Shown here: positions 21,062 through 44,400 of the stretch, piece after piece
Layout of the letters: each line of letters opens with the position of its first letter
Position numbering within the stretch: position 1 is the first letter of the stretch
Assembly (NCBI RefSeq): GCF_006345805.1
Contig: NC_043024.1
Span: 11,842,001 to 11,906,000, forward strand
Source of the DNA: Octopus sinensis
Lineage: Eukaryota
DNA length: 64,000 bases
Direction of reading: 5' to 3'
Notes under the pieces: model-generated
What the model saw: the letters and a program-made list of their open reading frames with translations, nothing else
What the model was told of the DNA's origin: nothing
Databases searched by the model: none
Made by a program: the position numbers and the translations under genes

Positions 21062-24000
21062 GTATTGCCAGTGAGTTTGTAAGATTATAGACGACCATAT
21101 AAAAGAGATGAAGGGGAGCTAACTGATGTTTTTTTTCTTTTTTTGGCAGAATGTCTACCAGAAGGAAGTCAATATAAAGAATACCGAAGTCTTATCTGCA
21201 ATATCTAACGCTGGATGTGGAATATCGTTAGCTTGTCTCGTTCTTACAATAATACTTTATGTTTCTTTAAAGTAAGCATTTCAATTTCTGTTTGTTTGTG
21301 CAAACATGGCTGTGTGTGCGGAAAAAAACGCTTGGTTCACGACCACATGGTTCCAGGTTCAGTCCTAATGCATGCCATGTTGTGCAAGTGTCTTCTACCA
21401 TAGCCTCAGGCCAACCAAACCCTTGTGAGTAAATTTGTTAGATGGAAACTGTTAGAAGCCTATCGTATACATGTAATGTATACAATGGGAGAAGAGTCTA
21501 TGGGAGAAGAGTCTATGAGGATGGAGGAAGGGTCTGTCAGGATGGGAGAGAGGTCCACTAGGTTGGGGGAAGGGTCTGTCAGGATGCAGAGGGGTCTGTA
21601 AGGATGGGGAAGGGGTCTGTCAAGATGGGAGAAGAGTCTATGAGGATGGGGGAAGGGTCTGCAAGGATGGAGGAAGGGTCTGTCAGAATGGGAGAGAGGT
21701 CCACTAGGTTGGGGGAAGGGTCTGTCAGGATGCAGAAGGGTCTGTAAGGATGGGGAAGGGGTCTGTCAAGATGGTAGAAGAGTCTATGAGGATGGGGGAA
21801 GGGTCTGAAAGGATGGAGGAAGGGTCTGTCAGGATGGGAGAGAGGTCCACTAGGTTGGGGGAAGGGTCTGTCAGGATGCAGAGGGTCTGTAAGGATGGGG
21901 AAGGGGTCTGTCAAGATGGGAGAAGAGTCAATGAGGATGGGGGAAGGGTCTGAAAGGATGGAGGAAGGGTCTGTCAGGATGGGAGAGAGGTCCACTAGGT
22001 TGGGGGAAGGGTCTGTCAGGATGCAGAGAGGTCTGTAAGGATGGGGAAGGGGTCTGTCAGGATGGTGTGTCTTTGTGTCTATTTCCACACCATCCTGACA
22101 GACCCCTTCCCCATCCTTACAGACCCCTCTGCATCCTGACAGACCCTTCCTCCAACCTTGTGGACCTCTCTCCCATCCTGAGAGACCCTTCCTCCGTTCT
22201 TTCAGACCCTTCCCCCATCCCCATAGACTCTTCTCCCATCTTGACAGACACTTCCTCCATCCTGGAAGATCTCTCCCCAGTCTGACAGATCCTCTACCCA
22301 TCCTAACAGACCCCTCTGCCATCCCGACAAAGCCTTCTCCCATTCCGACAGACCCCTACCTCTATTCTGACAGACCCTTCCCCCATCCTGACAGACTCCA
22401 CCCCCATCCTGACAGACCACTCCCTGATCCTAACAGACCCATCCCCATCCTTACAGACCCCTCCCCATCCTGACAGAACCCTCCTCATCATGATAGACCC
22501 TCCCTCATCCTTACACACACCTCCCCCATCCTTACAGACCCCTCTCCCATCCTGACAGACCTCCCTGATCCTAACAGACCCTTCCCATCCTTACAAATCC
22601 CTCCCCATCCTGCCAGCCCTCCTCCCTGATCCTAACAGACCCCTCCCCATCCTGACAGACCTCTCCCCGTCCTGACAGACCCCTCCCCATCATGATAGAC
22701 CCTCCCCCATCCTCTATTCTGACAGACCCTTTCCCCATCCTGACAGACTCCACCCCCATCCTGACAGACCCCTCCCTGATCCTAACAGACCCATCCCCAT
22801 CCCGACAGAGCCCTCCCCATCCTTACAGACCCCTCCCCATGCTGACAGCCCTCCTCCCTGATCCTAACAGACCCCTCCCCATCCTGACAGAACCCTCCTC
22901 ATCATGATAGACCCTCCCCCATCCTTACACACACCTCCCCCATCCTTACAGCCCTCCTCCCTGATCCTAACAGACCCCTCCCCATCCTGACAGACCTCTC
23001 CCCGTCCTGACTGACCCCTCCCCATCATGATAGACCCTCCCCCATCCTTATACACACCTCCCCCATCCTTACAGACCCCTCCCCCATCCTGACAGACCTT
23101 CTCCCTGATCCTAACAGACCCTCCCCATCCTTACAGACCCCTCCCCATCCTGACAGCCCTCCTCCCTCATCCTAACAGACCCCTCCCAATCCTGACAGAC
23201 CCCCCATCATGATAGACCCTCCCCCATCCTTACACACACCTCCCCCATCCTTACAGACCCCTACCCCACCCTGACAGACTCCACCTCCCTCTTTACAGAC
23301 CCCTCCCTCATCCTGACAGACTTTCTCCCCGATCCTGACAGACCCCTTCCCATCCTGACAGACCTTTCTTCCATCCAAAGTCAATTTTGCCTTTCATCCT
23401 TTGAGGGGAGTTGTCAATAAAATTAGTACCAGTTGCACACTGGGGGAGGTCTATATAATTGACCTAATCCCCTATCTCCCAAAACTGCTTGCCTTGTGCC
23501 AAAATTTAAAACCAATATTTCTTCATTCGTTATTTCAGAAATCTGTGGAAAATGTTGTTTTCAAAGATTTTAGTCAGCTTGTGCGTTTCTTTGGCAATCA
23601 CAAACCTTATCTTTATTGCTGGGATGCAGGCGCATGCTGTAAAATCAATAGTTATCTGTAAGGTAAGTGAAAATGCATTTATGCTTGTACATGCTTTGCT
23701 TTATATTAAGCACGAGTGGTGGAAGCACTCCGTCGGAAAGAAAGAAAAAAGAAAGAAAGAAGAAAAAAAATTGTTTACATCTTTACAGCTGGTCAGTTCT
23801 TTCAATAGAAAGTGATGAGTTGATTCTTGGCCTTTAAAAATGGTAAAGCCATGTGGCTACTCTGAGTGGGTCTTGATAAAAAGTTATTTTTCAAAAAATT
23901 GTCTGGATTTATTATCATCGTCATCATCATTGTCTTTTACTATCCTATGGCAGCACTCCGTCGGTTACGACGACGAAGTTTCCGGTTGATCCGAATCAAC

Positions 24001-27000
24001 GGAACAGCCTGCTCGTGAAATTAACGTGTAAGTGGCTGAGCACTCCACAGACACGTGTACCCTTAACGTAGTTCTCGGGGATATTCAGCGTGACACAGAG
24101 AGTGACAAGGCCGGCCCTTTGAAATACAGGTACAACAGAAACAGGAAGTAAGAGTGAGAGAAAGTTGTGGTGAAAGAGTACAGCAGGGATCACCACCATC
24201 CCTGCAGGAGCCTCGTGGAGCTTTAGGTGTTTTCGCTCAATAAACACTCACAACACCCGGTCTGAGAATCGAAACCGCGATCCAACGACCGCGAGTCCGC
24301 TGCCCTAACCACTGGGCCATTGCGCCTCCACTAAGCACGAGTAAAACGCCCCCGTCCAATGGACGGTGCTGAACTGTCAAACATGTAAACCAAATTATCT
24401 CAAAACAACTTGTCCGACCGTCCCATAGGCCTCCCCTGGGGAAATGACACTGACCAAAGAAAAAAGAAAGATTAAAATTTTGCTACATAGGTACAGCTGT
24501 GGCCTGTGGTAAAAAGCTTGCTTTCCAACCACGTGGTTCCAGGTTCAGTCCCATTGCATAACACCTTGGGCAAGTGACTTCTACTATGGCCTCAGGCTGA
24601 CCAAAGCCTTGTGAGTGGATTTGGTACATTGAAACTGAAAGAAGCCCATTGTGTATATACATATATGTATCTACGAGCAAAACATCCCCTGTCTAATGGA
24701 AGGTGCTGAGTTGTCAAACATTTAAACCAAATTTTCTCAAAACAACTTGTCCGACCGTCCCATAGGCCTCCCCTTTGAGAAACACGCATTTAACCTAAAT
24801 TTCAGACACCATCAAAGGAAGAAATAAAGATAGACTTTTTTTCTATTCCAAAGAAAAACGATTTTATTCACACAAATATGTAACCCAAGAGTTTAAAGTA
24901 CAAGTAATGATAAGACTGTTGGCTGGGAGAACACAAACATGGTTTAAACAGTAAGCTTGGCAGGAAAGAAACGTGCCTTTAAGCAGTACAAAAGCAACAA
25001 AAAATGGAAGGTGCAGTTATGTACAGATTGATGGAAGAAAAGCAAGATAAAAATGGCTTTATCGATCGCATTCTCACCTGGAATCGATTTTTGTAATTTT
25101 TTCAAGACTTATACACGCCCTGATACCTATTTCTTTATTACCCACAAGGGGCTTAACATAGAGGGGACAAACAAGGACAGACAAACGGATTATCCAATAG
25201 GACTGTGGTGGATTAGCAAAATCATTATATGAACTTATTTTCTCTACTGAATTTACGTCACTACATCGAACTTTGAGCAGGGCCTGGTTTTGATTTTCAT
25301 CCTTCTGGATGTAAAATATCAATCAATAGCAGTATCGTCCGGCGTTGCTCCGGTTTGTTTCGACCCTTTAGAATTGGAGGTTTTGTAGCTTGCATTATGT
25401 AGCTTGTTATTCTCTTTAAGTGAACATTTTTCCAGTTGAAATACACCGAAAAATGGCGACACAGCAGTCAAAATATCGTAAAAAAATAAGGATTTTCATA
25501 GAAAAAAAAGCACCTTTTTGATGTAAGTAATTTTTGGTGTTAACATGGTTCGATCTGAATTTTATCTTCTACGGAAGGAAGAACAAGCCTTCTTCTATCA
25601 TACTCTCGATTTTGATCAACTTGCGCCGCAGGGTCTCGGAGGAGACAGTGTTAGTTGAAGGCTGCCAAACCTGCCACACACAGCCAACTTCAGCTTTATA
25701 TATATAGACTAGCAGTATACCCGGCGTTGCTCGGGTTTGTTTCGACCCTTTAGAATTGGAATTTTTGAAAAGTAAAACTTTTGCATTATGTAGCTTGTTA
25801 TTCTCTTTAAGCGAACATTTTTCTGGTTGAAATACACCGAAAAATGGCGACACAGCAGTTAAAAAGTCGTAATAAATAGGGATTTTCATAGAAAAAAAGT
25901 ACCTTTTTGATGTAAATAATTTATGGTGTTAACATGGTCCGATTTGAATTTTTTCTTCTTTGAAAGGAAGAGCAAGCCTTCTTTTATCATACTCTCAATT
26001 TTGGTCAACTTGCGCCGCAGGGTCTCGGAGGAGATTGTGTTAGTTGAAAGTTACCAAATCTGCCATACACAGACAACTTCAGCTTTATATATATAGATAA
26101 TTGGTATGTGTTCACAAAGTCCAAACGATTAATACGAAAAAACCCTCCAGGCTACATCCCGAAAATTCATTTCTTTGCCGAATTTCTACAATGTTTACGG
26201 CGATTCGTTTTTATATCTTGATTTTTTTTTTCATGCAATTTACGCATGCTTGCACGCGTGGTGAAAACAGTTCACGTCAAACAGCTGACTGAGTAAAGTT
26301 CACTATTCAATGCATGGGATAAGGCCTAAACAGACACATTATCGATTTTTGCACTTGCGAGATGAATTTCGGAACAGAAAAAGCGCAGTTCAATTTTCAT
26401 TCGCCTAAACTTTAAGTGACCCATTTTTTTTGTGGTTCTACGATTTGTTGGCTAGGAGGAGATGTGCCGGGAAGTTAAACACACAGACACACAAGTTGAG
26501 TTTTATATATATAGAAGTACCAGCACCGATACTGTTAACTATATCCCCACCCCTGCAAAACAATATATTCAATATATACCCGAGGCCGTGTGTCGATGGC
26601 AGAAGTCATTATTGTTGGTGCTGATGTTGTTATTGTTGTCATTACAGTTGGTGGCTGCTCTGTTACACTACTTCCTTCTGGTGTCTTTCATGTGGATGGC
26701 TATAGAAGCAGTACATCTTCTCTTAAATATCGTTGTTTGCTTCAAAACGTTTGAGGCATCTTTCATAATGAGAGCTTCAATTTTAGCATGGGGTATGTAT
26801 AACGATTTTTTGTTACTTTATCTATCTCTCCCTCACACACACACACACACACACACCACACACACACACACACACGCGCGCGCAGACACACAATTTCCCT
26901 ATCTGTCTGTCTGTCTCTTTCTCTCTTTGATAGACATATAAGCTGAAAATAATACGAATTAAATCTAAAGTGAATATCAAATAAATAGTGCTTGCTTCAT

Positions 27001-27497
27001 TGGCTCAAAAACTGACCATCTGTTTCGTTATTACTCACAAGGGGCTAAACACAGAGGGGACAAACAAGGACAGACAAACGGATTAAGTCGATTATATCGA
27101 CCTCAGTGCGTAACTGGTACTTATTTAATCGACCCTGAAAGGATAAAAGGCAAAGTCGACCCGACCTCGGTGGAATTTGAACTCAGAACGTAGAGGCAGA
27201 CGAAAAACCTATTTCTTTACTACCCACAAGGGGCTAAACATAGAGAGGACAAACAAGGACAGACAAACGGATTGAGTCGATTATATCGACCCCAGTGCGT
27301 AACTGGTACTTAATTTATCGACCCCGAAAGGATGAAAGGCAAAGTCGACCTCGGCGGAATTTGAACTCAGAACGTAGAGGCAGACGAAATACGGCTACGC
27401 ATTTCGCCCGGCGTGCTAACGATTCTGCCAGCTTGTCGCCCTATCAAAACTGACCATCTCCAAGCATAACAATGCACGCACACGCACACACGTATGT

Positions 27498-27539
<42 letters not shown>

Positions 27540-30500
27540 GCGCACATGATGGTCTCTCTCTTCGAAGGTTATGTCTGAGTGTGCAACTGTTTCCGAATGA
27601 CCTGCACAAATGTTTTGTTTATAATGATCGAATGTATGTCCCGTGCATCAAACCGCTTCCTTCATCAAATAACAAAAACCGATCTGTGCGTAATACGAAA
27701 TAAAATAGTGACTTTCTTTTGTATTTGACAATTTTCCGGAAAAAAAAGCAGTCAAAAAATCGATTCAAATGTCACGTATTTATGATTCTAAATATTAATA
27801 AATATCTCCTTATTTATCTTCATTTATGTAAATATCGTTTCCAGGTCTTCCAGCTTTCATTGTTATACTTACTTTGTCAATCAATTACACAAACAATTAT
27901 ACGAGGGTTGCTGAAGTGTAAGTATTTCTGTGTTTTATCCATCTCATTTTTCTCTGGTCTTCGCTACTAACACAATAAAACACCAACTTTCCATACAAAG
28001 AATGCCGTGACCTAAATTCTCAGACGTTTCCCAGACGCTCAACCTCCTATTCTCGTGCCGCACTAATGAAATTCTTATAACCCATACTGAGGTGTTTCAT
28101 AATGCCGCTGATATTTGAAACTCTCTTCACAGCAACAGTTTCTCGACAAATTAAACAAACTCATTTTCTTTGGTGCTTGGTGAAAAAGTAGTTGATTAAA
28201 ATTTCGGTGAAAAAGTAGTTGATTAAAATTTCGGTGAAAAGTAGTTGATTAAAATTTCGTGTGAAAAAGTAGTTGCATAAAATTCGGTGAAAAAGTAGTT
28301 GATTAAAATTTCGGTGAAAAAAAAGAGTTGATTAAAATTTCGGTGAAAAAGTAGTTGACTAAAATTTCGGTGAAAAAGTAGTTGATTATAATTTCGGAGA
28401 AAAAGTATTTGATTAAAATTTCTGTTTGATTGTGAAAAAGTATTTGATTAAAATTTCGGTGAAAAAGTAGTTGATTAAAACTTCGGTGAAAAAGAAGTTG
28501 ATTAAAATTTCGGTGAAAAAGTAGTTGATCAAAATTTCGGTGAAAAAGTAGTTGCATAAAATTTCGGTGAAAAAGTAGTTGATTAAAATTTCGGTGAAAA
28601 AGTAGTTGATTAAAATTTCGGAGAAAAAGTAGTTGATTAAAATTTCGGTGAAAAAGTAGTTGATTAAAATTTCGGTGAAAATGTAGTTGATTAAAATTTC
28701 GGTGAAAAAGAAGCTGATTAAAATTTCGGTGAAAAAGTAGTTGATTAAAATTTCGGTGAAAAAGTAGTTGATTAAAATTTCGGTGAAAAAGTAGTTGATT
28801 AAAATTTCGGAGAAAAAGTAGTTGATTAAAATTTCGGTGAAAAAGTAGTTGATTAAAATTTCGGAGAAAAAGTAGTTGATTAAAATTTCGGTGAAAAAGT
28901 AGTTGATTAAAATTTCGGTGAAAAAGTAGTTGATTAAAATTTCGGTGAAAAAGTAGTTGCATAAAATTTCGGTGAAAAAGTAGTTGATTAAAATTTTGGT
29001 GAAAAAGTAGTTGACTAAAATTTCGGTGAAAAAGTAGTTGATTAAAATTTCGGTGAAAAAGTAGTTGATTAAAATTTCGGTGAAAAAGTAGTTGATTAAA
29101 ATTTCGGTGAAAAAGTAGTTGATTAAAATTTCGGTGAAAAAGTAGTTGACTAAAATTTCGGTGAAAAAGTAGTTGATTATAATTTCGTTGAAAAAGTATT
29201 TGATTAAAATTTCGGTGAAAATGTAGTTGATTAAAATTTCGGTGAAAAAGAAGCTGATTAAAATTTCGGTGAAAAAGTAGTTGATTAAAATTTCGGTGAA
29301 AAAGTAGTTGATTAAAATTTCGTTGAAAAAGTAGTTGATTAAAATTTCGGTGAAAAAGTAGTTGCATAAAATTTCGGTGAAAAAGTAGTTGATTAAAATT
29401 TCGGTGAAAAAGTAGTTGATTAAAATTTCGGAGAAAAAGAAGTTGATTAAAATTTCGGTGAAAAAGTAGTTGATTAAAATTTCGGTGAAAAAGTAGTTGA
29501 TTAAAATTTCGGTGAAAAAGTAGTTGATTAAAATTTCGGTGAAAAAGTAGTTGCATAAAATTTCGGTGAAAAAGTAGTTGATTAAAATTTCGATGAAAAA
29601 GTAGTTGACTAAAATTTCGGTGAAAAAGTAGTTGATTAAAATTTCGGTGAAAAAGTAGTTGATTAAAATTTCGGTGAAAAAGTAGTTGATTAAAATTTCG
29701 GTGAAAAAGTAGTTGACTAAAATTTCGGTGAAAAAGTAGTTGATTATAATTTCGTTGAAAAAGTATTTGATTAAAATTTCGGTGAAAATGTAGTTGATTA
29801 AAATTTCGGTGAAAAAGAAGCTGATTAAAATTTCGGTGAAAAAGTAGTTGATTAAAATTTCGGAAAAAGAAAAAGAAATTTCGGTGAAAAAGTAGTTGAT
29901 TAAAATTTCGTTGAAAAAGTAGTTGATTAAAATTTCGGTGAAAAAGTAGTTGCATAAAATTTCGGTGAAAAATAGTTGATTAAAATTTCGGTGAAAAAGT
30001 ATTGATTAAAATTTCGGAGAAAAAGAAGTTGATTAAAATTTCGGTGAAAAAGTAGTTGACTAAAATTTCGGTTAAAAAGTAGTTGATTAAAATTTCGGTG
30101 AAAAAGTAGTTGATTAAAATTTCGGTGAAAAAGTAGTTGATTAAAATTTCGGTGAAAAATTAGTTGATTAAAATTTCGATGAAAAAGTAGTTGACTAAAA
30201 TTTCGGTGAAAAAGTAGTTGATTATAATTTCGGAGAAAAAGTATTTGATTAAAATTTCGGTGAAAAAGTAGTTGATTAAAACTTCGGTGAAAAAGAAGTT
30301 GATTAAAATTTCGGTGAAAAAGTAGTTGATTAAAATTTCGGTGAAAAAGTAGTTGCATAAAATTTCGGTGAAAAAGTAGTTGATTAAAATTTCGGTGAAA
30401 AAGTAGTTGATTAAAATTTTGGTGAAAAAGTAGTTGATTAAAATTTCGGAGAAAAAGTAGTTGATTAAAATTTCGGTGAAAAAGTAGTTGATTAAAATTT

Positions 30501-31584
30501 CGGTGAAAAAGTAGTTGATTAAAATTTCGGTGAAAAAGTAGTTGATTAAAATTTCGGTGAAAAAGTAGTTGATTAAAATTTCGTTGAAAAAGTAGTTGAT
30601 TAAAATTTCGGCACTCAAAATCCACTTAGCTTTTCTTGTTTTCCTTTTTTTGTTATTATTCAAGAGATGCAGGATCCTGGAATGGAAGGTGAAATGTATG
30701 AATAAGAATAAGTCAGAACAAAAGCAAACGTGATAATCCACTGAAGATGTATAGCAATGAATAACCATACAAATACATTATCGGAAGAGTTTCTCTACAT
30801 GGTCAGAGTGGCCACTTTGTTTCTCACGATGCCATTTCAATAAATAACAATAAGCAGCAATTATTGATCAACAGAACTTCTTACCGGTGATCGCCAAAAC
30901 ACAAGGTAAAGGTGATGGTAGACAATGTATGGATGTCAGAAGGCCTGCGCTGTACACGTGCCAAGCAGTAAGATTGAACCAAGAACTATGTGGTTGTGAA
31001 GCAACCTTCGTACCACACAGCTACAAGTATGGGGCCGTGTTTTCGTGTGGCTGGATATTGAAAGACATAATAAGAATATCTTAGATAACGATGTATATAA
31101 CATGTTGGAGCGAGGTCACTTGACCCTGTTATCTCCCCTACTATCGCTCTAGCGTCTAACGTCTGACCTCTAACGTTTGACCTCCGATCTCTGACTTCTC
31201 CTGAAATCAGAACGCCATGTTGGATCGTTAGCCCCTACACGCAATTTTTTCTCTCTCCTTGTTTCTTTTCTGTGTATCTTTCTGTCGAAGAGCGTAGGCT
31301 CGAAACGTAAAAGACTTGTTTTATTTCTATTCCTGAGCGCCATACTAATACATTTGTTTGTTTGTACTCCACCTGCCTTCGTCTTTTGTTTATTTTCATA
31401 AAGCTTCCCGTTATATATATATATACCTGTATATTACATAAGGCATATATATATATAACTGTATATTACATCTATATATATGTGTGTATGTATATCTGTA
31501 TATATATATAAATATATATTATATATAATATATATATATATTACATCTATATATATGTGTGTATGTATATCTGTATATATATAT

Positions 31585-31619
<35 letters not shown>

Positions 31620-31651
31620 TACATCTATATATATGTGTGTATGTATATCTG

Positions 31652-31742
<91 letters not shown>

Positions 31743-33079
31743 CGCTAGCTTCTGCACGCATTTTTCTCTCTCCTTGTTTGTCTCCTTGTTTCTTTTCTGT
31801 GTATCTTTCTGTTGAAGAGCGTAGGCTCGAAACGTAAAAGACTTGTTTTATTTTTATTCCTGAGCGCCGTACTAATACATTTGCTTGTTTGTACTCCACC
31901 TGCCTTCGTCTTTTGTTTATTTTCATAAACCTACCTTCGTCTTTTGTTTATTTTCGTAAACCTTCCCGTTATATAACTCACTGCAAGTATGAGAATGTTA
32001 TCCCCTTTCCTTTTGGATCAAAATCACTTCACCTTAATCCCTCTGTGACACTTCAATTTATTGACTGAACTTTTGACAGATTTCCTTTAGTAATTGTCTT
32101 TCTATTTCTTTTGTAGCTGTTGGTTGTCCAAGACACCTTTCTATGCTGCTCTACTCACTCCCGTGGGTGCCATTCTTGCCTTTAACATTATCACATTCGT
32201 TTACGCTTTCGTGCGAATTGCTATGATGCAGAATTTCAACCACGCTTTGAAGAAAGCAAGAAAGGTACGCGTTTTGGGCGTCGTCGGTCTTTCCCTCCTT
32301 CTGGGTTTCACCTGGGTCATAGCATTCTTTTCTATTGATAAAGCGGCGGAAGTATTTCAATATCTCTTTGCTATCTTCAATACTCTTCAAGGAACGTTTA
32401 TCTTTATAATCTACTGTATATACAAGAAAGATACCAGAGATATCGTGAGCCAGTTTATACGTAATCAAAGGAAAAATTTGGCCAAGAAGAGAGAGGGTAA
32501 GTGCAATTTCGTCTTTCTTACTTACTCTTTCCACTCTTTACTCTTTTACATGTTTCACTCATGACCCCAGTGAGTAACTGGTACTTATTTAATCGACCCC
32601 GAAAGGATGAAAGGCAAAGTCGACCTCGGCGGAATTTGAACTCAGAACGTAAAGACAGACGAAATACCTATTTCTTTACTACCCACAAGAGGCTAAACAC
32701 AGAGAGGACAAACAAGGACAGACAAAGGGATTAGGTCGATTATATTGACTCCAGTGCGTAACTGGTACTTATTTAATCGACCCCGAAAGGATGAAAGGCA
32801 AAGTCGATCTCGGCGGAATTTGAACTCAGAACGTAACGGCAGCCAAAATACAACTATGCATTTCGCCCGGCGTGCTAACGTTTCTGCCAGCTCGCCGGTA
32901 ATGCTATCTTTTCATTTATAAGAAAAAAGTTACTGGCAATTTGGTTTACATAGGAATGCAATGTTTAAGATTGATTGTGCTTTTTCTCCAAAAGAATAAT
33001 ATTTTCTCTACTTTTTTCAGATACATATGATAACACGAGGACAGAAGGTGGAACAGCAGAAACGGTGTTGCAGAATTAA
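376..33079 (+). CDS. Adhesion GPCR (ADGRG2/G4/G6-like), 5'-partial; join(376-530,3001-3115,5195-5364,6645-6876,9958-10123,12721-12897,15290-15418,18234-18383,21150-21271,23539-23662,26648-26792,27845-27917,32117-32496,33021-33079)
   Basis: Manual splicing: all 13 introns GT..AG with compatible phases, 2197 nt, one open frame to TAA (about 731 aa). Domain order HRM, GAIN/GPS, 7TM is diagnostic of adhesion GPCRs. Exact orthology is not assignable without a search. Confidence 0.93.
583..1805 (+). mobile_element. SINE family B (tRNA head, Meta-domain-like core) with about 6.5 tandem ~183-bp modules
   Basis: One head (gcgagctggcagaatcgttagcacg) then repeats of tatttcgtctg...gagttcaaattcc...gtcgactctgcctttcatcctttcggggtcg...aaagaaatagg. 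Meta-domain resemblance is from recall. Confidence 0.85.
1870..2500 (-). mobile_element. RTE-clade LINE ORF2 fragment (pre-RT region), degenerate
   Basis: [17 protein letters not shown]...[18 protein letters not shown] and upstream LRQMKDKW...[11 protein letters not shown] motifs typical of RTE elements. Confidence 0.85.
2518..2900 (+). mobile_element. SINE family A1 (tRNA-derived), full length
   Basis: A box tggcccagtgg, B box ggtttcgattcc; 12-bp TSD actagtctgatt (2506-2517, 2901-2912). Confidence 0.9.
3001..3115 (+). CDS. aGPCR HRM domain exon, N-half ([37 protein letters not shown])
   Basis: Polypyrimidine/cag acceptor, GT donor; C..WP.T..G..ATLPC...ATR.C hormone-receptor motif. Confidence 0.9.
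3206..3911 (-). mobile_element. Non-autonomous Helitron (family H1), head-to-tail dimer 3206-3512 + 3513-3911
   Basis: Minus strand 5' TC, 3' CTAG preceded by a cccg..cggg hairpin; no TSD; CTAG abuts the TC of the next copy. Confidence 0.8.
4110..4340 (-). mobile_element. SINE family B monomer, variant tail
   Basis: Reverse complement of the B head and core. Confidence 0.8.
4559..4958 (+). mobile_element. Non-autonomous Helitron (family H2)
   Basis: A|TCtatatatata ... cccgagcaacagtggg..CTAG|T; homologous to 25326-26097. Confidence 0.78.
5195..5364 (+). CDS. aGPCR HRM domain exon, C-half (...[30 protein letters not shown]...)
   Basis: ttcag / gtgagt; W..PD.S.C motif; the split codon TG|T gives the conserved Cys. 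Confidence 0.9.
5438..5900. repeat. 22-bp minisatellite (caactacaagggggcccacctg), about 21 copies
   Basis: Direct periodicity; three units give the 22-aa repeat in ORFs 5369/5401/5700. Confidence 0.92.
6110..6582 (+). mobile_element. SINE family D (V-domain-like), tandem pair: 5'-truncated 6110-6327 and full 6328-6582
   Basis: tRNA head with B box gtttcgattcc; gctgcgatggactggcgtcccgtccagg...gaaaccggg resembles the V-SINE domain (recall). Confidence 0.7.
6645..6876 (+). CDS. aGPCR GAIN subdomain A exon (...[24 protein letters not shown])
   Basis: ttgcag / gtaaaa; matches ORF-track frame 6662..6880; helical GAIN-A-like sequence. Confidence 0.9.
6968..7100 (+). mobile_element. SINE family B, 3'-truncated
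   Basis: Head plus core, running into (TA)n(TG)n. Confidence 0.8.
7650..8551 (-). mobile_element. Composite SINE-A insertion (A1 7650-8030, (TA)n, A2 8230-8551)
   Basis: Flanked by tactatcctat on both sides; two identical heads with different tails. Confidence 0.8.
8745..9172 (-). mobile_element. SINE family C (CORE-like, internal TA/TG microsatellite)
   Basis: Reverse complement of ataggcgcaggagtggctgtgtgg...gggttcagtccc...cttgggcaagtg...gtaaaagag. Confidence 0.85.
9958..10123 (+). CDS. aGPCR GAIN exon ([40 protein letters not shown]...)
   Basis: ttacag / gtaaag; phase 2 in, phase 0 out; matches ORF 9962..10186. Confidence 0.9.
10396..10613. repeat. Near-perfect fold-back, ~100-bp arms, ~14-nt spacer
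   Basis: cacaatcaaggaatggcc...ccaggaga versus tctcctgg...ggccattccttgattgtg. Confidence 0.9.
10700..11160. repeat. (TA)n/(TACA)n compound microsatellite
   Basis: Visible; source of IYIY ORFs. Confidence 0.9.
11735..12115 (-). mobile_element. SINE family B, head + 2 modules
   Basis: Reverse complement with the same module junction (cctatttcttt). Confidence 0.8.
12203..12672. repeat. (TAG)n/(TTG)n trinucleotide tract, ~470 bp
   Basis: Visible; explains poly-T/L/V ORFs. Confidence 0.95.
12721..12897 (+). CDS. aGPCR GAIN exon (...YISLPKSIL...[16 protein letters not shown]...)
   Basis: Strong ttcccccag acceptor; ISLPKS and RIVF..M.DD.LY GAIN-B-like motifs; donor position uncertain (see findings). 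Confidence 0.82.
12961..13375 (+). mobile_element. SINE family B dimer with TSD
   Basis: ggtattttaaaaa at 12948-12960 and 13376-13388. Confidence 0.88.
13921..14440 (+). mobile_element. SINE family C with internal ~90-bp tandem duplication
   Basis: Head/CORE segment repeated at about 14040-14130; (gtaaaaga)n tail. Confidence 0.85.
14641..15024 (+). mobile_element. SINE family A1
   Basis: 12-bp TSD actattacatga (14629-14640, 15025-15036). Confidence 0.9.
15290..15418 (+). CDS. aGPCR GAIN exon ([43 protein letters not shown])
   Basis: ttgcag / gtaata; INS.IISASI...L.EPV.I.F GAIN motif. Confidence 0.93.
15440..15838 (-). mobile_element. SINE family C
   Basis: Reverse complement of the family consensus; begins about 20 nt after the exon donor. 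Confidence 0.85.
15990..17335. repeat. Old diverged ~305-bp tandem repeat (about 3 units) partly derived from the (TAA)n-tailed element, interrupted by a SINE
   Basis: Recurrent tattgagcagaatatttgctataacgatatttctgcttcagcaactcag near 16135, 16845 and 17150; part is the reverse complement of 19505-19670. Confidence 0.7.
16316..16707 (+). mobile_element. SINE family A1 with (CCAT)n tail
   Basis: 11-bp TSD taagaaataac (16305-16315, 16708-16718). Confidence 0.9.
17382..17776 (-). mobile_element. Helitron family H1
   Basis: CTAG/hairpin and TC ends; homologous to 3513-3911. Confidence 0.8.
17787..18165 (+). mobile_element. Chimeric SINE: family B 5' part fused to family C 3' half
   Basis: Switch at the shared tgtttgtcccc motif near 17980. 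Confidence 0.7.
18234..18383 (+). CDS. aGPCR GPS exon ([20 protein letters not shown]...[13 protein letters not shown])
   Basis: Canonical GPS C-x2-W...W-x3-GC...C-x-C-x-HL|T; ccag / gttggt. Confidence 0.97.
18622..19045 (+). mobile_element. SINE family C, full length
   Basis: Matches the family consensus seen in other copies. Confidence 0.87.
19402..20007 (+). mobile_element. ~570-bp non-coding retroelement 3' end embedded between (TAA)n tracts
   Basis: Flanked by (TAA)n on both sides; fragments recur on the minus strand at 16.0-17.2 kb. LINE 3'-UTR origin is inferred. Confidence 0.55.
20008..20560 (-). mobile_element. Putative non-autonomous Penelope-like element carrying a hammerhead; 3'-end fragments also at 52125-52240 and 58282-58430
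   Basis: Shared attaggg..aaacttacagggaaaaattagatttagg block in three places; hammerhead at its 5' end. PLE assignment is inference. Confidence 0.5.
20462..20552 (-). ncRNA. Type I hammerhead ribozyme motif
   Basis: Minus strand: ccuacg CUGAGGA G[60-nt stem II]C GAAAC GUAC GUC|cguagg; 6-bp stem I, full conserved core, palindromic stem III. Confidence 0.8.
21150..21271 (+). CDS. aGPCR TM1 exon ([27 protein letters not shown])
   Basis: ggcag / gtaagc; IS..GC.IS...L..T secretin/adhesion TM1 motif. Confidence 0.95.
21495..23370. repeat. Inverted (fold-back) ~21-bp minisatellite: G-rich arm 21495-22069, C-rich arm 22086-23370
   Basis: ggatgggggaagggtctgtca units, 146-bp higher-order period in the left arm; centre gatggtgtg-16nt-cacaccatc. 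Confidence 0.9.
23539..23662 (+). CDS. aGPCR TM2 exon ([22 protein letters not shown]...ICK)
   Basis: ttcag / gtaagt; hydrophobic helix; phases compatible. Confidence 0.95.
23718..24331 (-). mobile_element. SINE-A1 insertion carrying ~200 bp of flank copied from 7445-7650
   Basis: 11-bp TSD taagcacgagt (23707-23717, 24332-24342); flank nearly identical to the upstream locus. Confidence 0.85.
25326..26097 (-). mobile_element. Helitron family H2, head-to-tail dimer (25326-25708 + 25709-26097)
   Basis: Junction tatatagactagc = CTAG|TC on the minus strand. Confidence 0.8.
26099..26515 (-). mobile_element. Helitron family H3, 5' portion only
   Basis: Nearly identical to 40878-41321. Confidence 0.7.
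26648..26792 (+). CDS. aGPCR TM3-TM4 exon ([21 protein letters not shown]...LAWG)
   Basis: ttacag / gtatgt; A.LLHYF.L.SF.WM..EA family motif. Confidence 0.97.
27035..27440 (-). mobile_element. SINE family B dimer with TSD
   Basis: aaaactgaccatct on both sides. Confidence 0.85.
27845..27917 (+). CDS. aGPCR TM4/ECL2 exon ([25 protein letters not shown])
   Basis: ttccag / gtaagt; WG.PA motif spans the junction. Confidence 0.93.
27970..30660 (-). pseudogene. hAT (Buster/SPIN/GTF2IRD2-like) transposase N-terminal relic split by a satellite
   Basis: KK(S*)VDFECRNFN...[20 protein letters not shown](fs)RHYET...[15 protein letters not shown] matches the BED-finger N-terminus of this family (recall). 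Confidence 0.75.
28179..30611. repeat. 27-bp satellite (gaaaaagtagttgattaaaatttcggt), about 90 copies
   Basis: Direct periodicity; 27 nt = 9-aa repeat in the minus-strand ORFs. Confidence 0.97.
31240..31972 (+). mobile_element. Direct-repeat pair (31240-31410, 31755-31972) resembling Penelope pseudo-LTRs, each with a variant hammerhead, separated by a TA-rich array
   Basis: Near-identical ~170-bp repeats containing tcttt-ctgt(c/t)gaa-gagcgtaggctc-gaaacgta-aaaga. Confidence 0.55.
32117..32496 (+). CDS. aGPCR TM5-TM7 exon (CWLS...[10 protein letters not shown]...[14 protein letters not shown])
   Basis: ttgtag / gtaagt; CWL, LG.TW and FN.LQG..IF motifs; ORF 32094..32564. Confidence 0.97.
32560..32897 (-). 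mobile_element. SINE family B, head + ~1.6 modules
   Basis: Family sequence, same junction. Confidence 0.82.
33021..33079 (+). CDS. aGPCR last coding exon ([19 protein letters not shown])
   Basis: tttttttcag acceptor; phase 1 matches; ends TAA. Confidence 0.8.
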
Positions 33080-33126
33080 AATCAAGGAATTGTCTGGAAA
33101 TCGTCCTTGATCATATTTTTCGTTAT

Positions 33127-33203
33127 AAATTTTAGTCAACTACTTTTTCACCGAAATTTTAGTCAACTACTTTTTCACCGAAATTTTAATCAAGTACTTT
33201 TTC
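33127..33203. repeat. About 2.8 copies of the 27-bp satellite unit, inverted, in the putative 3' UTR
   Basis: aaattttagtcaactactttttcaccg... is the reverse complement of the 28-30 kb unit. Confidence 0.92.
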
Positions 33204-33348
33204 ATATAAGGAAACTTTATTTTTACTTATCAACACAACACTATATAAGCGTGAAACCATATAATCCGCAATGTAATTAAAACGAAATGCTGTGCCTTAT
33301 AAGTTTACTGGAAAACAGAAAACCTGAAAAACTTTTTTATAATATATA

Positions 33349-34376
33349 CTAGCAGTATCGCCCGGCGTTGCTCGGGTTTGTAAGGGAAATAACTATATAA
33401 GCATTTTTAGAGAGTTACTTCCCTTATAGATGCCAATTCGGGCTTTCTTAGCCATTTCTGTTTTGGTGTCTTCAAGCCATGAAGTCGTTGTTCTAAAAGA
33501 ACGCTGGTCTCCTTGACAACGCTTTACGACGTTGATTTCCTTACACTCCCTTCCCCACAGCTTCACGAGGGAGGGAAGAAGGGGGAGAAGCAACACAGGT
33601 GCAGGTGTTTGAGCGTGGACGCCAACTCCGCCGCCATCGACACACGGAAAATTATGCATTAAAATGGAATAAAAAATGATGTTAAATTATTTTTTAAATC
33701 GTAGACTCATCGTAGACGCGCGCTAATACTCAGACGGGCTCGATATGAATCACGACTATAAGATACCCGAATTTGGTTAAACTGCACGGCAAAATGTGGG
33801 AGTAGTTAGGAATCTAAATCGAAGGGGACAGACACTCACACAACTACAGTTTTATATATATAGATATACTAGCAGTATCGCCCGGCGTTGCTCGGGTTTG
33901 TAAGGGAAATAACTATATAAGCATTTTTAGAGAGTTACTTCCCTTATAAATTCGGGCTTTCTTAGCCATTTTTGTTTTGGTGTCTTCAAGCCATGAAGTC
34001 GTTGTTCTAAAAGAACGCTGGTTTCCTTCACAACGCTTTACGACGTTGATTTCTTTACACTCCTCTTCCCCACAGCTTCACGAGGGAGGGAAGGGGAGAA
34101 GCAAACAGGTGCAGCTGTGAGCGTGGACGCCAACTCCGCCGCATCGACACACGATGCATTTTATGCATTAAAATGGAATAAAAAATGATGTTAAATTATT
34201 TTAAAATCGTAGACTCATCGTAGACGCGCGCTAATAGCCAGACGGGCTCGATATTAATCACGACTATAAGATACCCGAATTTGGTTAAACTGCACCGCAC
34301 GCAAATGTGGAGTAGTTAGGAATCTAAATCGTAGGAGACAGACACTCACACAACTACAGTTTTATATATATATAGA
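33349..34376 (-). mobile_element. Helitron H1 variant with ~220-bp internal insert, tandem dimer (33349-33864, 33869-34376)
   Basis: H1 ends plus an extra segment absent from other H1 copies. Confidence 0.8.
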
Positions 34377-34804
34377 TATATATCTAGAATTGTGTTTTCT
34401 AACTGCCAATTTCTTTATTAACACTTTTAATGTAATTCTTAAAATTTCTGAATAAAAGAATAAATTTGATTTGTGATTATAATCTGTCAGTTGAAAAACT
34501 AATATTGCAATCACGGAGAGAGACATTGATTTCATTGGTTGTTAAAAAGTTCACTAAAAATGTGCGATCTCACAACATCGATTAGTTTTATAATCGCTTA
34601 TCTGATTTCTGATATCAGGTCTTTCAACTATTATTGTCATAGGCGCAGGTGTGGCAGTGTGATAAGAAACTTGCTTCCCAACTGCATGGCTTCGGGTTCA
34701 GTCACGCTGCTAGGCACCTTGAGAAAGTGGTTCTTCTATAGCCTCAGTCAGACCAAAGCCTTGCGAGTGGATTTGGTAAACAGAAACATAAAGAAGCCCG
34801 CCGT

Positions 34805-41415: not shown

Positions 41416-44400
41416 GAACTGTCCGGAGTGTTGCCATAGTAACGGAGCTAAATCAGGCAGAGTAAAGCCGCTCAGCACAGATTAACCTCGAACACTGCTG
41501 TGCATGTGCACGAAGTTTTAACGTTCTGGCTCACTTCCGGTATTTAAAGCAGTGCTTGGAAGAAAGGTGTGTAGCGTGTGATCATCGCATTGATCATGGT
41601 AAAGGTGAGTAGAGAATCTGCATCAATTTGTCAAAAGCTTGGTGATACCTGCTCAGAGGAGTGTGCGAGTGTTCAGACGTTTCCCAGAATGGCCGAGAAA
41701 TGTCGATATTGACGAAGGTTCTGGGAGACCCACAACCAGCAGGACAGAGCAAAACATCGCAGATGTGCGTGCAGCCGTGAAGGGGAAATCGTCGAATCCC
41801 CATCTGTGAGTTATCAGAGGTTGTGCAGGTTAGCTACGGTTCAGGTCAGTCCATTATCACTGAAGATTTCGGTGTGAGACGCGTGTCTGCCAAGTTTTTA
41901 AGCAGACTGCTTTCAGCTGACCAAAAATACACTCAGGATTCAATTGCCCAAAATCTCCTTCACTGTATCGAGAACGATGAGAACTTTTTGACAACGGCCA
42001 TAACAGGTGAGGAATCGTGGGTCTGTGGAAATGACCCCGAAACAAGGCTCGGTATTCGCAGTGGAAGACCCCAACCTGTCCGAGACCGAAGAAAGCGCGA
42101 ATAACTTGAAGCAATGTGAAGACACAAATAACTGCGGCGTTTACAGGATGCTATTCGTCGGAAAAGGCTATTCTGCGGAAAAGGCTATTCGGCGGAAAAG
42201 GCTATTCGTCGGAAGATGTTATTCGTCGGAAAATGCTATTCATCGGAAAAGGCTATTCGTCGGAAAAGGCGATTCGGCGGAAAAGGCTATTCGTCGGAAA
42301 AGGCTATTCGTCGGAAAAGGCTATTTGTCGGAAAAGGTTATTATTCGGAAAAGTCTATTCGTCGGAAAAGGCTATAGGTCGGAAAAGGCTATTCGTCGGA
42401 AAAGGCTATTCGTCGGAAAAGGCTATTTGTCGGAAAAGGTTATTATTCGGAAAAGGCTATTCGTCGGAAAAGGCTATAGGTCGGAAAAGGCTATTCGTCG
42501 GAAAAGGCTATTCGTCGGAAAATGTTATTCGTCGGAAAATGCTATTCATCGGAAAAGGCTATTCGTCGTAAAAGGCTATTCGTCGGAAAAGGCTATAGGT
42601 CGGGAAAAGCTATTCGTTGGAAAAGGCTATAGGTTGGAAAAGGCTATAGGTCGGAAAAGGCGATAGGTCGGAAAAGTCTATTCGTCGGAAAAGGCTATTC
42701 GGCGAAAAAGGCTATTCGGCGGAAAAGGCTATTCGTCGGAAAAGGCTATTTGTCGGAAAAGGTTATTATTCGGAAAATTCTATTCGTCGGAAAAGGCTAT
42801 TCGTCGGAAAAGTCTATTTGTCGGAAAAGGCTATTCGTCGGAAAGGCTATTTGTCGGAAAAGGTTATTATTCGGAAAAGTCTATTCGTCGGAAAAGGCTA
42901 TAGGTCGGAAAAGGCTATTCGTCGGAAAAGGCTATTCGTCTGAAAAGGCTATTTGTCGGAAAAGGTTATTATTCGGAAAAGGCTATTCGTCGGAAAAGGC
43001 TATAGGTCGGAAAATGTTATTCGTCGGAAAATGCTATTCATCGGAAAAGGCTATTCGTCGTAAAAGGCTATTCGTCGGAAAAGTCTATTCGACGGGAAAT
43101 GCTATTCGTCGGAAAAGGCTATAGGTCGGGAAAAGCTATTCGTTGGAAAAGGCTATAGGTTGGAAAAGGCTATAGGTCGGAAAAGGCGATAGGTCGGAAA
43201 AGTCTATTCGTCGGAAAAGGCTATTCGGCGAAAAAGGCTATTCGGCGGAAAAGGCTATTCGTCGGAAAAGGCTATTTGTCGGAAAAGGTTATTATTCGGA
43301 AAATTCTATTCGTCGGAAAAGGCTATTCGTCGGAAAAGTCTATTTGTCGGAAAAGGCTATTCGTCGGGAAAGGCTATTTGTCGGAAAAGGTTATTATTCG
43401 GAAAAGTCTATTCGTCGGAAAAGGCTATAGGTCGGAAAAGGCTATTCGTCGGAAAAGGCTATTCGTCTGAAAAGGCTATTTGTCGGAAAAGGTTATTATT
43501 CGGAAAAGGCTATTCGTCGGAAAAGGCTATTCGTCGGAAAATGTTATTCGTCGGAAAATGCTATTCATCGGAAAAGGCTATTCGTCGTAAAAGGCTATTC
43601 GTCGGAAAAGTCTATTCGTCGGGAAATGCTATTCGTCGGAAAAGGCTATAGGTCGGGAAAAGCTATTCGTTGGAAAAGGCTATAGGTTGGAAAAGGCTAT
43701 AGGTCGGAAAAGGCGATAGGTCGGAAAAGTCTATTCGTTGGAAAAGGCTATTCGGTGGAAAAGGCTATTTGTCGGAAAAGGTTATTATTCGGAAAAGTCT
43801 ATTCGTCGGAAAAGGCTATTCGTCGGAAAAGTCTATTTGTCGGAAAAGGCTATTCGTCGGAAAAGGCAATTCGTCGGAAAAGGCTATTCGTCGGAAAAGT
43901 CTATTCGTCGGAAAAGGCTATAGGTCGGGAAAAGCTATTCGTTGGAAAAGGCTATAGGTCGGAAAAGGCTATTCGGCGGAAAGACTATTCGTCGGAAAAG
44001 GCTATTCGGCGGAAAGACTATTCGTCGGAAAAGGCTATTCGTCGGAAAAGTCTATTCGTCGGAAAAGTCTATTCCTCGGAAAAGGCTATTCGTCGGAAAA
44101 GTCTATTCGTCAGAAAAGGCTATTCGTCGGAAAATGCTATTCGTGGGAAAAGATTATTATTCGGGAAAGTCTATTCGTCGGAAAAGGCTATTCGTCGGAA
44201 ACGGATGTAGGTCGGAAAAGGCTATTCGTCGGAAAAGGCTATTCGTCGGAAACGGATATAGGTCGGAAAAGGCTATTCGTCGGAAAAGGCTATTCGTCGG
44301 AAAAGGCAATTCCTCGGAAACGTCTATTCGGTGGAAAAGGCTATTCGTCGGAAACGGATATAGGTCGGAAAAGGCTGTTCGTCGGAAAAGGCTATTCGTC

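What the first reader, a model, noticed from the sequence alone, without database searches (positions are those of the whole stretch)
27970..30660. A second satellite (27 bp x ~90) born inside a hAT transposase N-terminus, in an intron
Seen on the minus strand: the flank before the array reads [11 protein letters not shown] and the flank after reads [22 protein letters not shown]. The unit cgaaattttaatcaactactttttcac encodes RNFNQ in one frame and NYFFTE in another. Known: Buster/SPIN/GTF2IRD2-like transposases begin KRKVD.ECR.F...W...YFF.E..K.VCLIC.E..AV.K..N.KRHYET.H. Inference: a small deletion plus CGAA microhomology created the monomer, which expanded to 2.4 kb, independently of the mariner case 12 kb away.
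Basis: partly seen in the sequence, partly recalled or inferred. Interest (0 to 1): 0.75.

Follow-up and report, generated by a model that had tools for sequence, protein, structure and literature searches.

The report
Minisatellite grown inside dead hAT transposon
A 27-base piece of a broken hAT "jumping gene" was copied about 90 times where it sat, inside an intron of an octopus receptor gene; the process is well known, and the one unusual detail is a small inverted copy in the same gene's 3' end.

Summary
TRF finds 27 bp x 90.1 copies at 28179-30611. A whole-genome pattern search finds the unit only at this locus in the 2.7-Gb octopus assembly.

Read on the minus strand, the two flanks are the two halves of a decayed hAT transposase N-terminus ([13 protein letters not shown] ... 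[22 protein letters not shown]).
- A relative on another chromosome carries both halves 43 bp apart, with no array.
- Intact octopus hAT ORFs hit the array-collapsed sequence at 37 bits. None of 300 shuffles reached that score.
- The unit lacks 14 bp present in every relative, so the deletion came before or with the first duplication.

The "intron" claim also holds. The array lies antisense in a 4.2-kb intron (27918-32116) of a plus-strand 7tm_2 GPCR gene.

It could pair with the intronic array in the pre-mRNA.

TE-born minisatellites are well documented. This scan already found the same kind on other DNA of this genome (s1-108478, s1-110516) and 12 kb away in this window (s1-255010). Verdict: real, correctly read, a new member of a known kind, of modest interest.

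The parts
28179..30611 (-). Main minisatellite: 27-bp unit, about 90 copies, 26% G+C. The unit spans hAT codons ..R-N-F-N.. to ..Y-F-F-T-E.. with a 14-bp internal deletion.
   Evidence: TRF; unit search; whole-genome pattern search finds it only here; unit-variant map with duplicated multi-unit blocks.
30612..30681 (-). 5' half of the hAT remnant: KxRK motif, a 5-bp insertion, then VDFEC, running directly into the first unit.
   Evidence: Translations; alignment to relative L026 starts at about 30681; alignment to the intact L042 subfamily.
28023..28178 (-). 3' half of the hAT remnant: ..[22 protein letters not shown], a frameshift, RHYET, then about 25 further decayed codons. This is the BED-like / Spin-doc zinc finger.
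   Evidence: Pfam zf-BED E 0.007 and zf-C2H2_12 E 0.04, both below cut-off; tblastn of intact ORFs covers 28193-28023; 82% DNA identity to L026.
33114..33206 (+). Inverted mini-array of about 3.4 units, carrying the AGTC unit variant that is a minority type in the main array. Inferred to lie in the host gene's 3'UTR.
   Evidence: arms 91 nt at 90%, 78 nt at 97%; paralogues have 35 nt of other sequence at that site; stop codon inferred at 33077-33079.
26646..26791 (+). Host gene exon (7tm_2, TM3 region).
   Evidence: Pfam 7tm_2 positions 78-127, E 9.5e-8, 32 bits, over cut-off; a 3528-nt contig of run X9 covers exactly 26646-26791.
27845..27917 (+). Host gene exon (TM4: (G)[23 protein letters not shown]). 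Acceptor ..tttccag, donor GTAAGT.
   Evidence: Conserved with C27 paralogues including the splice sites; frame; X9 bin depths fit coverage of 27845-27917 only.
27918..32116 (+). Host intron, 4199 bp, holding the hAT remnant and the array in antisense orientation. The same intron is about 620 bp in paralogues.
   Evidence: Donor at 27918; acceptor AG at 32115-32116; phases fit; paralogue spacing and absence of hAT there.
32117..32496 (+). Host gene exon (7tm_2, TM5-TM7). Donor GG|GTAAGT is conserved in paralogues.
   Evidence: Pfam 7tm_2 positions 148-250, E 2e-10, 40.8 bits.
33021..33079 (+). Inferred last coding exon, ending ..TAETVLQN followed by stop TAA.
   Evidence: Phase-1 continuation from exon 32117-32496. 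The C-terminus is conserved with paralogues (..TAETDL stop). Inferred; not checked with reads.

Best explanation
A hAT transposon of the octopus subfamilies whose transposase starts with a Spin-doc/BED-like zinc finger inserted, in antisense orientation, into an intron of a 7tm_2 GPCR paralogue. It decayed to a remnant of about 230 bp covering only the first ~75 codons.

Within that remnant, 14 bp were lost between the codons for NFN and YFF. The resulting 27-bp stretch lay between two short direct repeats: CCGA in ..TGCCGAAAT.. and, by inference, in ..CACCGAx... It was duplicated by slippage or microhomology-mediated repair.

Once two or more copies existed, replication slippage and unequal exchange of multi-unit blocks grew the tract to about 90 copies (2.43 kb). 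It now makes up more than half of the intron.

Later, a piece of about 3.4 units was copied in inverted orientation to a site 2.5 kb away, just after the host gene's stop codon. This probably happened by a template switch at a site with weak pre-existing likeness.

Shown: the array, its uniqueness in the genome, the hAT identity and continuity of the flanks, the 14-bp deletion, the block duplications, and the intronic position.

Inferred: the order of events, the microhomology, the mechanism of growth, and the direction of copying to the mini-array. The array most likely has no function.
For: Array and uniqueness:
- TRF finds 27 bp x 90.1 copies.
- There are 86 genome-wide matches at up to 2 mismatches, all within C28:11870179-11875179, which lies in this window. 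The reversed-pattern control gave 0. The DNA search agrees.

hAT identity of the flanks:
- tblastn of 13 intact octopus hAT ORFs against the collapsed locus gives at best 37.0 bits. None of 300 dinucleotide shuffles reached that (maximum 30.0).
- Of the intact ORFs scanned, L040 and L045 have zf-C2H2_12 and Dimer_Tnp_hAT over cut-off, plus a weak DUF4371 hit.
- The genome holds at least 766 PF18658 candidates.

Continuity of the flanks:
- L026 (C3) carries [48 protein letters not shown] in one piece with no array.
- L026 matches the intact L049 ORF at E 5e-10.

Deletion and microhomology:
- The window is 14 nt shorter than L026 and than the intact L042 subfamily between NFN and YFF.
- No long insertion turned up among the 89 segmented units; apart from two short irregular stretches they are about 27 bp.
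- The L042 subfamily reads ..TTTACCGAC.. where the array junction reads ..TTCACCGAA...

Growth by blocks:
- The unit-variant string repeats FGNECAAA twice and BAIJ.E(K/C) at both ends.

Relative age:
- 36 of 89 units equal the consensus, with a mean of 1.2 edits per unit.
- The flanks are only about 82% identical to L026.

Independent data:
- Contigs from three other organism labels cross the flank/array junction with 2 differences in about 500-650 nt.
Against: - The remnant alone does not reach Pfam's cut-offs (zf-BED 16.8 bits, zf-C2H2_12 14 bits). The hAT call rests on targeted comparison with genomic relatives.
- No terminal inverted repeats or target-site duplication were found, so the transposon's borders are undefined.
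- Only one close relative (L026) exists in the genome.
- The right-hand CCGA is not present in today's flank, which reads CCAAG, so it is inferred.
- The site of the mini-array in paralogues shows about 59% likeness to the unit, so the direction of copying is not proven.
- The copy number of 90 rests on one assembly. Contigs from short reads reach only the junction.
Confidence: 0.85

Rival explanations
1. The tandem repeat was already an internal feature of a (non-autonomous) hAT element and arrived by transposition. The locus would be a normal family member rather than a local birth.
For: Many TE families carry internal tandem repeats that seed satellites (review PMC9659126). Both known copies of this subfamily (the window and L026) are short N-terminal remnants.
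Against: The unit occurs nowhere else in 2.72 Gb. L026 has the region unexpanded and 14 bp longer. None of the 13 intact ORFs has a repeat there.
Confidence: 0.04
2. The unit is native to the host gene's 3'UTR site (33114-33206). It first triplicated there, and the intronic array is a secondary inverted copy that landed in the hAT remnant because of chance likeness.
For: Paralogues on C27 and C30 have, at the homologous 3'UTR site, 35 nt that resemble the unit weakly (about 16 of 27 positions, with an 8-nt gap).
Against: The unit matches the hAT relatives better: about 21-22 of 27 positions to L026, including 10 of 10 at GAAATTTTAA. It continues the hAT reading frames of both flanks without any extra base. 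The mini-array carries the AGTC variant, a minority type in the main array, whereas the majority AATC state matches hAT relatives.
Confidence: 0.05
3. The hAT-like reading of the flanks is a chance resemblance in AT-rich DNA, and the array is an ordinary minisatellite of unknown origin.
For: Pfam hits on the remnant are below cut-off. The remnant is short and carries stops and frameshifts.
Against: None of 300 shuffles reached the observed tblastn score. A second genomic remnant aligns over both flanks at DNA level (82% over 76 bp and 93% over 28 bp) and itself matches hAT ORFs at E 5e-10. There is 83% DNA identity over 30 bp to the CLICSETVAV codons of the L042 subfamily.
Confidence: 0.02
4. 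The array is an assembly artefact, either a collapsed or over-expanded repeat or a chimeric join.
For: Tandem arrays are error-prone in assemblies. No single contig from the public runs spans the array.
Against: Independent contigs from runs of three other organism labels cross the downstream junction into the first unit. Array words have raised depth compared with the flank in all of them. The assembled array has an ordered pattern of variants and duplicated blocks, not a featureless run.
Confidence: 0.04

Closest known systems
Transposon-derived minisatellites and satellites (Ahmed & Liang 2012, PMC3389668; review by Zattera & Bruschi 2022, PMC9659126)
   Same: A short segment of a dead transposable element is amplified head to tail on the spot. 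Proposed mechanisms are microhomology-mediated duplication, followed by slippage and unequal exchange.
   Different: According to the review, monomers mostly come from non-coding, already repetitive parts (TIRs, LTRs, UTRs). Coding-derived cases are fewer, for example LINE ORF2, gag and a CACTA transposase. Here the monomer comes from the zinc-finger-proximal N-terminal codons of a hAT transposase and is confined to a single locus.
Sister cases in this same genome found by this scan (s1-255010 mariner 17 bp x 258 in this window; s1-108478 hAT 3' end 212 bp x 34; s1-110516 hAT stop-codon region 27 bp x 96)
   Same: A dead DNA-transposon coding fragment, an array of a few kb at a single locus, and an octopod genome.
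   Different: This case uses a different part of the transposase (the N-terminus) and a different unit. It adds an intronic position in a GPCR gene and an inverted copy in the inferred 3'UTR. Those notes were not re-tested here, apart from the TRF row for 42150-46532.
hAT transposases with an N-terminal Spin-doc/BED-like zinc finger (Pfam PF18658 + DUF4371 + PF05699; the Buster / GTF2IRD2 / ZBED5-like group, named from my own knowledge)
   Same: The remnant reads KxRK-VDxECRxFN..YFF..VCLICxExVAV..N..RHYET, like the N-termini of the intact octopus copies.
   Different: Only about 75 decayed codons remain. There is no catalytic core, no dimerisation domain and no recognisable ends. It is a fossil, not an element.
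Inverted-repeat dsRNA substrates of ADAR (for example paired young repeats; PMC9989829)
   Same: Two young, nearly identical repeats lie in opposite orientation within one transcription unit. The predicted duplex is about 85 bp.
   Different: Editing was not tested here. One arm is a 90-copy intronic array and the other a 3.4-unit 3'UTR copy, not two dispersed TE insertions.

Membership tests
hAT-superfamily transposase gene (zf-C2H2_12 / Buster-like subgroup) | N-terminal BED-like / Spin-doc zinc finger (C-x2-C ... H-x3-5-H) preceded by KRK..ECR.F..W...YFF | tested here: inconclusive
   The motif is visibly present across three frames. Pfam hits are below cut-off (zf-BED E 0.007, PF18658 E 0.04). 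Targeted tblastn beats all 300 shuffles. The W block is deleted and the second His is lost.
hAT-superfamily transposase gene (zf-C2H2_12 / Buster-like subgroup) | RNase-H-like DDE catalytic core with insertion domain | tested here: not met
   tblastn of full-length ORFs against the whole window hits only 28193-28023. The remnant lacks everything after about codon 80. It derives from a hAT gene but is not a hAT element.
hAT-superfamily transposase gene (zf-C2H2_12 / Buster-like subgroup) | C-terminal hAT dimerisation domain (PF05699) | tested here: not met
   Absent from the window remnant. Present over cut-off in the intact relatives L040 and L045 used for comparison.
hAT-superfamily transposase gene (zf-C2H2_12 / Buster-like subgroup) | Short terminal inverted repeats and an 8-bp target-site duplication | tested here: inconclusive
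   Homology to L026 begins at a shared CAGRA at about 30681, which might be a terminus. The 3' end is missing, so no TIR pair or TSD can be shown.
TE-derived tandem repeat born in situ | The monomer is homologous to a TE segment, and both array flanks continue that TE without a break | tested here: met
   The first unit follows ..GAGTGCC directly, and the last unit runs into ..AAGCACC.. of the same reading frame.
TE-derived tandem repeat born in situ | Unexpanded state exists in other copies of the TE, and the array is absent elsewhere in the genome | tested here: met
   L026 has the single, longer version. The 13 intact ORFs have no repeat there. All 86 genome-wide matches lie in this window.
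Satellite DNA in the strict sense | Long arrays (tens of kb to Mb), usually at many loci or in heterochromatin | tested here: not met
   There is one 2.43-kb array plus an 81-93 bp copy, both inside one gene. By size and unit length it is a minisatellite.
7tm_2 (secretin/adhesion-type) GPCR host gene | 7tm_2 profile over Pfam's cut-off, in exons with consistent splice sites and phases | tested here: met
   Two exons score 32 and 40.8 bits against a cut-off of 20.6, covering profile positions 78-127 and 148-250. The TM4 exon between them supplies the GWGLP motif. Phases fit. A probable RNA contig covers the first two exons.

The most novel reading that the evidence does not exclude
The intronic array (90 antisense units) and its 3.4-unit sense copy, about 35 nt after the stop codon, lie on the same GPCR pre-mRNA. 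There they could form an AU-rich duplex of about 85 bp, predicted at -116 kcal/mol against -24 +/- 5 for shuffles. That would make this transcript a strong ADAR or dsRNA-pathway substrate. If so, a transposon-born minisatellite would have created, in two steps, a private editing or regulatory hairpin for one member of an expanded cephalopod receptor family. More broadly, several such arrays found by this scan hint that this genome turns dead transposase fragments into arrays unusually often.
Probability: 0.15. Interest if true: 0.55.

Novelty: new member of a known kind. Interest (0 to 1): 0.3.

Why it matters
This is a very clean, fully traceable example of how a minisatellite is born. The parent sequence, the unexpanded relative, the small deletion that defined the monomer, the probable microhomology, and the later block duplications are all readable in one locus.

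It shows that a coding remnant of a DNA transposon, not only TIRs or UTRs, can seed an array. The array has roughly sevenfold enlarged an intron compared with the gene's paralogues.

Taken with the sister cases in this genome, it could feed a genome-wide count of TE-born arrays in cephalopods.

The inverted 3'UTR copy gives a concrete, testable candidate for repeat-driven dsRNA in an animal known for heavy RNA editing.

For annotation, the array creates spurious minus-strand ORFs of 550, 232 and 202 aa that gene callers may report.

Tried and rejected
- Pfam on the remnant pieces by reference gave only sub-threshold zf-BED and zf-C2H2_12 hits. The two shortest pieces gave nothing.
- A search of the whole genome with the 37-aa zinc-finger piece found only itself and L026 (E 0.1).
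- A DNA search with the upstream flank found nothing but itself.
- The intact L042 ORF has no relative among solved structures by sequence.
- My first collapsed construct dropped two bases (CC) and put the upstream half out of register. It was rebuilt and re-run.
- Base-level autocorrelation of the array was uninformative because small indels shift the phase. The unit-variant string was used instead.
- I looked for the hAT remnant in the same intron of paralogues. There were no tblastn hits in L058-L062 and no DNA hit to the hAT part in the 36 paralogous loci.
- I rejected reading independent transcription of the array from its depth in the probable RNA run X9. The 3'UTR copy, or low-level pre-mRNA multiplied by 90 copies, explains it.
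- I rejected using the depth ratios as copy numbers, because the tool warns against it.
- The array-collapsed sequence and frame checks with carried bases were made only inside scripts from the session's files.
Full report
**1. The observation**

- Tandem Repeats Finder reports one array at 28179-30611: period 27, 90.1 copies, 92% matches, 1% indels, score 4200.
- The consensus unit has 87 matches at up to 3 mismatches in the window, against none in 100 dinucleotide-preserving shuffles. Of these, 84 lie head to tail on the minus strand.
- On the minus strand the upstream flank reads ..[17 protein letters not shown].
- The downstream flank reads [28 protein letters not shown] and, one frame over, QRHYET.
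- The unit reads RNFNQLLFH in one frame and EILINYFFT in another.
- The description and coordinates are correct.

**2. Where it is**

- The window is C28:11842001-11906000 of a 2.72-Gb assembly. Earlier notes of this scan call it an octopus.
- An exhaustive pattern search of that genome finds 86 matches at up to 2 mismatches. All lie between C28:11870179 and 11875179, inside this window. The reversed-pattern control finds none.
- A BLAST-type search with four units agrees.
- The repeat is therefore a single-locus minisatellite, not a dispersed satellite family.

**3. Are the flanks a hAT transposase N-terminus?**

- Taken alone, the 37-aa open piece after the array gives only sub-threshold Pfam hits: zf-BED E 0.007 and Spin-doc zinc finger PF18658 E 0.04.
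- The genome is full of intact relatives. PF18658 gives at least 766 candidates, and the 150 scored are all over cut-off. Many sit in open frames of 590-640 aa.
- I cut out 13 of these ORFs from several subfamilies.
 - They begin like ..KKRKIEGECRVFNENWTEKYFFTDVGVKAACLICSETVAVFKEYNLKRHFQTKH (L042).
 - Another example is ..KKRKVDDECRIFNKEWGEKYFFVETNNQKASCLICNESVAVMKEYNIRRHYEAKH (L051).
- L040 and L045 carry PF18658 at the N-terminus and the hAT dimerisation domain PF05699 at the C-terminus, both over cut-off. They also have a weak DUF4371 hit.
- Inside a script I collapsed the array to one unit and ran tblastn.
 - All subfamilies hit the junction region. The best score was 37.0 bits, with E 4e-7 to 1e-4 for this small target.
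 - None of 300 dinucleotide shuffles of the same 1.6 kb reached that score. Their mean maximum was 18.8 bits and their largest 30.0.

**4. Do the two flanks belong to one element?**

- Yes. One relative exists at DNA level, at C3:42.94 Mb (L026). It matches the downstream flank at 82% over 76 bp and the upstream flank at 93% over 28 bp. The two matches are only 43 bp apart.
- L026 reads K(L)[49 protein letters not shown] in one piece, with no repeat.
- It matches intact hAT ORFs at E 5e-10.
- It sits in unrelated surroundings, so it is an independent insertion of the same old subfamily.

**5. How the monomer arose**

- Between the NFN and YFF codons, every intact copy and L026 have six codons (xxWxxx). 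The window has four bases there.
- Alignments put the loss at 14 nt.
- No long insertion turned up among the 89 segmented units; apart from two short irregular stretches they are about 27 bp. The deletion therefore preceded or accompanied the first duplication.
- The periodic tract runs from ..GTG|CCGAAATTT.. to ..TTTTTCACC|AAGCACC...
- Inside the array the junction is CACC|GAAA. The intact L042 subfamily reads TTTACCGAC at that same place.
- The ancestral right flank therefore very probably read CACCGAx. That gives a CCGA direct repeat at both ends of the 27-bp stretch.
- Today's flank reads CCAAG, one CpG transition away. Two array units show the same G-to-A change.
It is an inference.
- The window remnant also has a 5-bp insertion after KxRK and a frameshift before RHYET.

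**6. How it grew**

- Coding each unit by its variant gives a string in which multi-unit blocks recur.
 - FGNECAAA occurs twice, and its first two units (FG) a third time.
 - BAIJ.E(K/C) occurs near both ends.
- This is the footprint of unequal exchange or slippage of blocks of 8 to about 20 units on top of single-unit changes.
- Thirty-six of 89 units equal the consensus, with a mean of 1.2 edits per unit. The hAT flanks differ from L026 by about 18%. The array is therefore much younger than the insertion.

**7. The host gene and the intron claim**

- While tracing a repeat next to the array, I found that four blocks of the window are collinear, at 72-76% identity, with many loci on C27, C29, C8 and C14. 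The blocks are 26633-26829, 27759-27970, 32087-32464 and 33189-33272.
- They are exons of a plus-strand GPCR.
 - Window 26633-26827 matches Pfam 7tm_2 positions 78-127 (E 9.5e-8).
 - Window 32094-32462 matches positions 148-250 (E 2e-10).
 - Both are over cut-off.
- Between them, a 73-bp exon (27845-27917) with conserved acceptor and GTAAGT donor supplies ..(G)[11 protein letters not shown].., completing the GWGLP motif of TM4.
- The next acceptor is at 32115-32116, and the phases fit.
- The exons were searched one by one by reference.
- In a small run labelled as probable RNA (X9), a 3528-nt contig covers exactly 26646-26791.
 - The bin depths of 8.85 and 9.34, against the contig's 14.8, fit coverage of 27845-27917 only.
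 - Depth is nil over 27940-28119.
- The hAT remnant and array therefore lie antisense in a 4199-bp intron (27918-32116).
- In paralogues that intron is about 620 bp and holds no hAT, so the insertion is specific to this gene copy.

**8. The inverted mini-array**

- At 33114-33206 the plus strand carries about 3.4 units. Its arms pair with the main array at 90% over 91 nt and up to 97% over 78 nt.
- Its left flank is unique in the genome.
- Continuing the gene model:
 - Exon 32117-32496 ends at a donor conserved in paralogues.
 - A last exon starts at 33021 and ends ..TAETVLQN-stop at 33077-33079. Paralogues end ..TAETDL-stop.
 - An ATTAAA lies at 33276.
- The mini-array would thus lie in the 3'UTR, about 35 nt after the stop codon. 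This is inferred, not checked with reads.
- Paralogues have 35 nt of different sequence there, with weak likeness to the unit.
- I read that likeness as an anchor for a template switch from the main array, for two reasons.
 - The unit fits the hAT relatives better than it fits the paralogue sequence.
 - The mini-array carries a variant (AGTC) that is a minority type in the main array.
- The reverse direction of copying is kept as a rival at low odds.
- On the pre-mRNA the two would be complementary. RNAduplex gives -116 kcal/mol against -23.7 +/- 4.6 for shuffles.
- Since metazoan A-to-I editing mainly targets dsRNA made by young repeats, octopus included in that survey (PMC9989829), this is a testable side hypothesis.

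**9. Independent data**

- Public runs under four coded organism labels hold about half of the sampled words of the locus.
- Contigs of three of them cross from the flank into the first unit, with 2 differences in about 500-650 nt. Examples are X3 at 27551-28207 and X5 at 27683-28195.
- The junction is therefore not an artefact of this assembly.
- The labels are too close to each other to date the array.
- Depths are not copy numbers, and I do not use them so.

**10. Comparison with what is known, and verdict**

- Tandem repeats born from transposable elements are well documented. Thousands of human minisatellites derive from TEs (PMC3389668, listed).
- The review PMC9659126 lists TIRs, LTRs and UTRs as the usual sources. 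It gives fewer cases from ORFs, including a CACTA transposase.
- This scan has already reported the same kind of thing on other DNA of this genome, and 12 kb away in this window.
It is a new member of a known kind: a neat teaching example with one modestly interesting extra, the inverted 3'UTR copy.

Noticed in passing
window 33114-33206 (+): An inverted 3.4-unit copy of the 27-bp repeat lies about 35 nt after the inferred stop codon of the host GPCR gene. It is complementary to the intronic array on the same pre-mRNA, with a predicted duplex of -116 kcal/mol. Paralogues have 35 nt of weakly similar native sequence at the site.
   Followed up: partly
window 26646-33079 (+); paralogues L058-L061 (C27) and further hits on C29, C8, C14, C9: The host gene is a 7tm_2 (secretin/adhesion-type) GPCR belonging to a family with at least 36 paralogous loci, many clustered on C27 at 8.4-9.7 and 17.4-18.3 Mb. 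Exon blocks are 72-76% identical and the introns are not conserved.
   Followed up: partly
window 28303-29955, 29927-30625, 30160-30768 (-): Two of the three minus-strand frames of the unit have no stop codon. As a result the array creates spurious ORFs of 550, 232 and 202 aa that a gene caller could report as proteins.
   Followed up: no
window 632-1807, 5439-5902, 21500-23364, 42150-46532, 47782-48199, 48957-50622, 55883-57366, 58814-60834: The 64-kb window is unusually dense in tandem arrays of many unit sizes (12, 17, 21, 22, 184/369, 225 and 296 bp). Several are built from a tRNA-like SINE of about 184 bp. This suggests a regional or genome-wide tendency toward tandem amplification.
   Followed up: no
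window 33327-34377; L062 5573-6094: A unit of about 520 bp is present twice in tandem right after the host gene's inferred 3' end. It is 91-94% identical to a copy on C30, so it is a young repeat family.
   Followed up: no
L026 4897-5084 (C3:42938596-42938783): This is the only other remnant of the same old hAT subfamily. It is likewise reduced to the first ~60 codons and cut off by another repeat. Both remnants share a CAGRA about 60-70 bp upstream of the VDF codons that might be the element's 5' end.
   Followed up: partly
window 28031-28093, run X4: One DNA run shows a second contig with seven clustered differences in the hAT flank, at depth 32.6 of 53.7. It looks like a second haplotype of the locus.
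   Followed up: no
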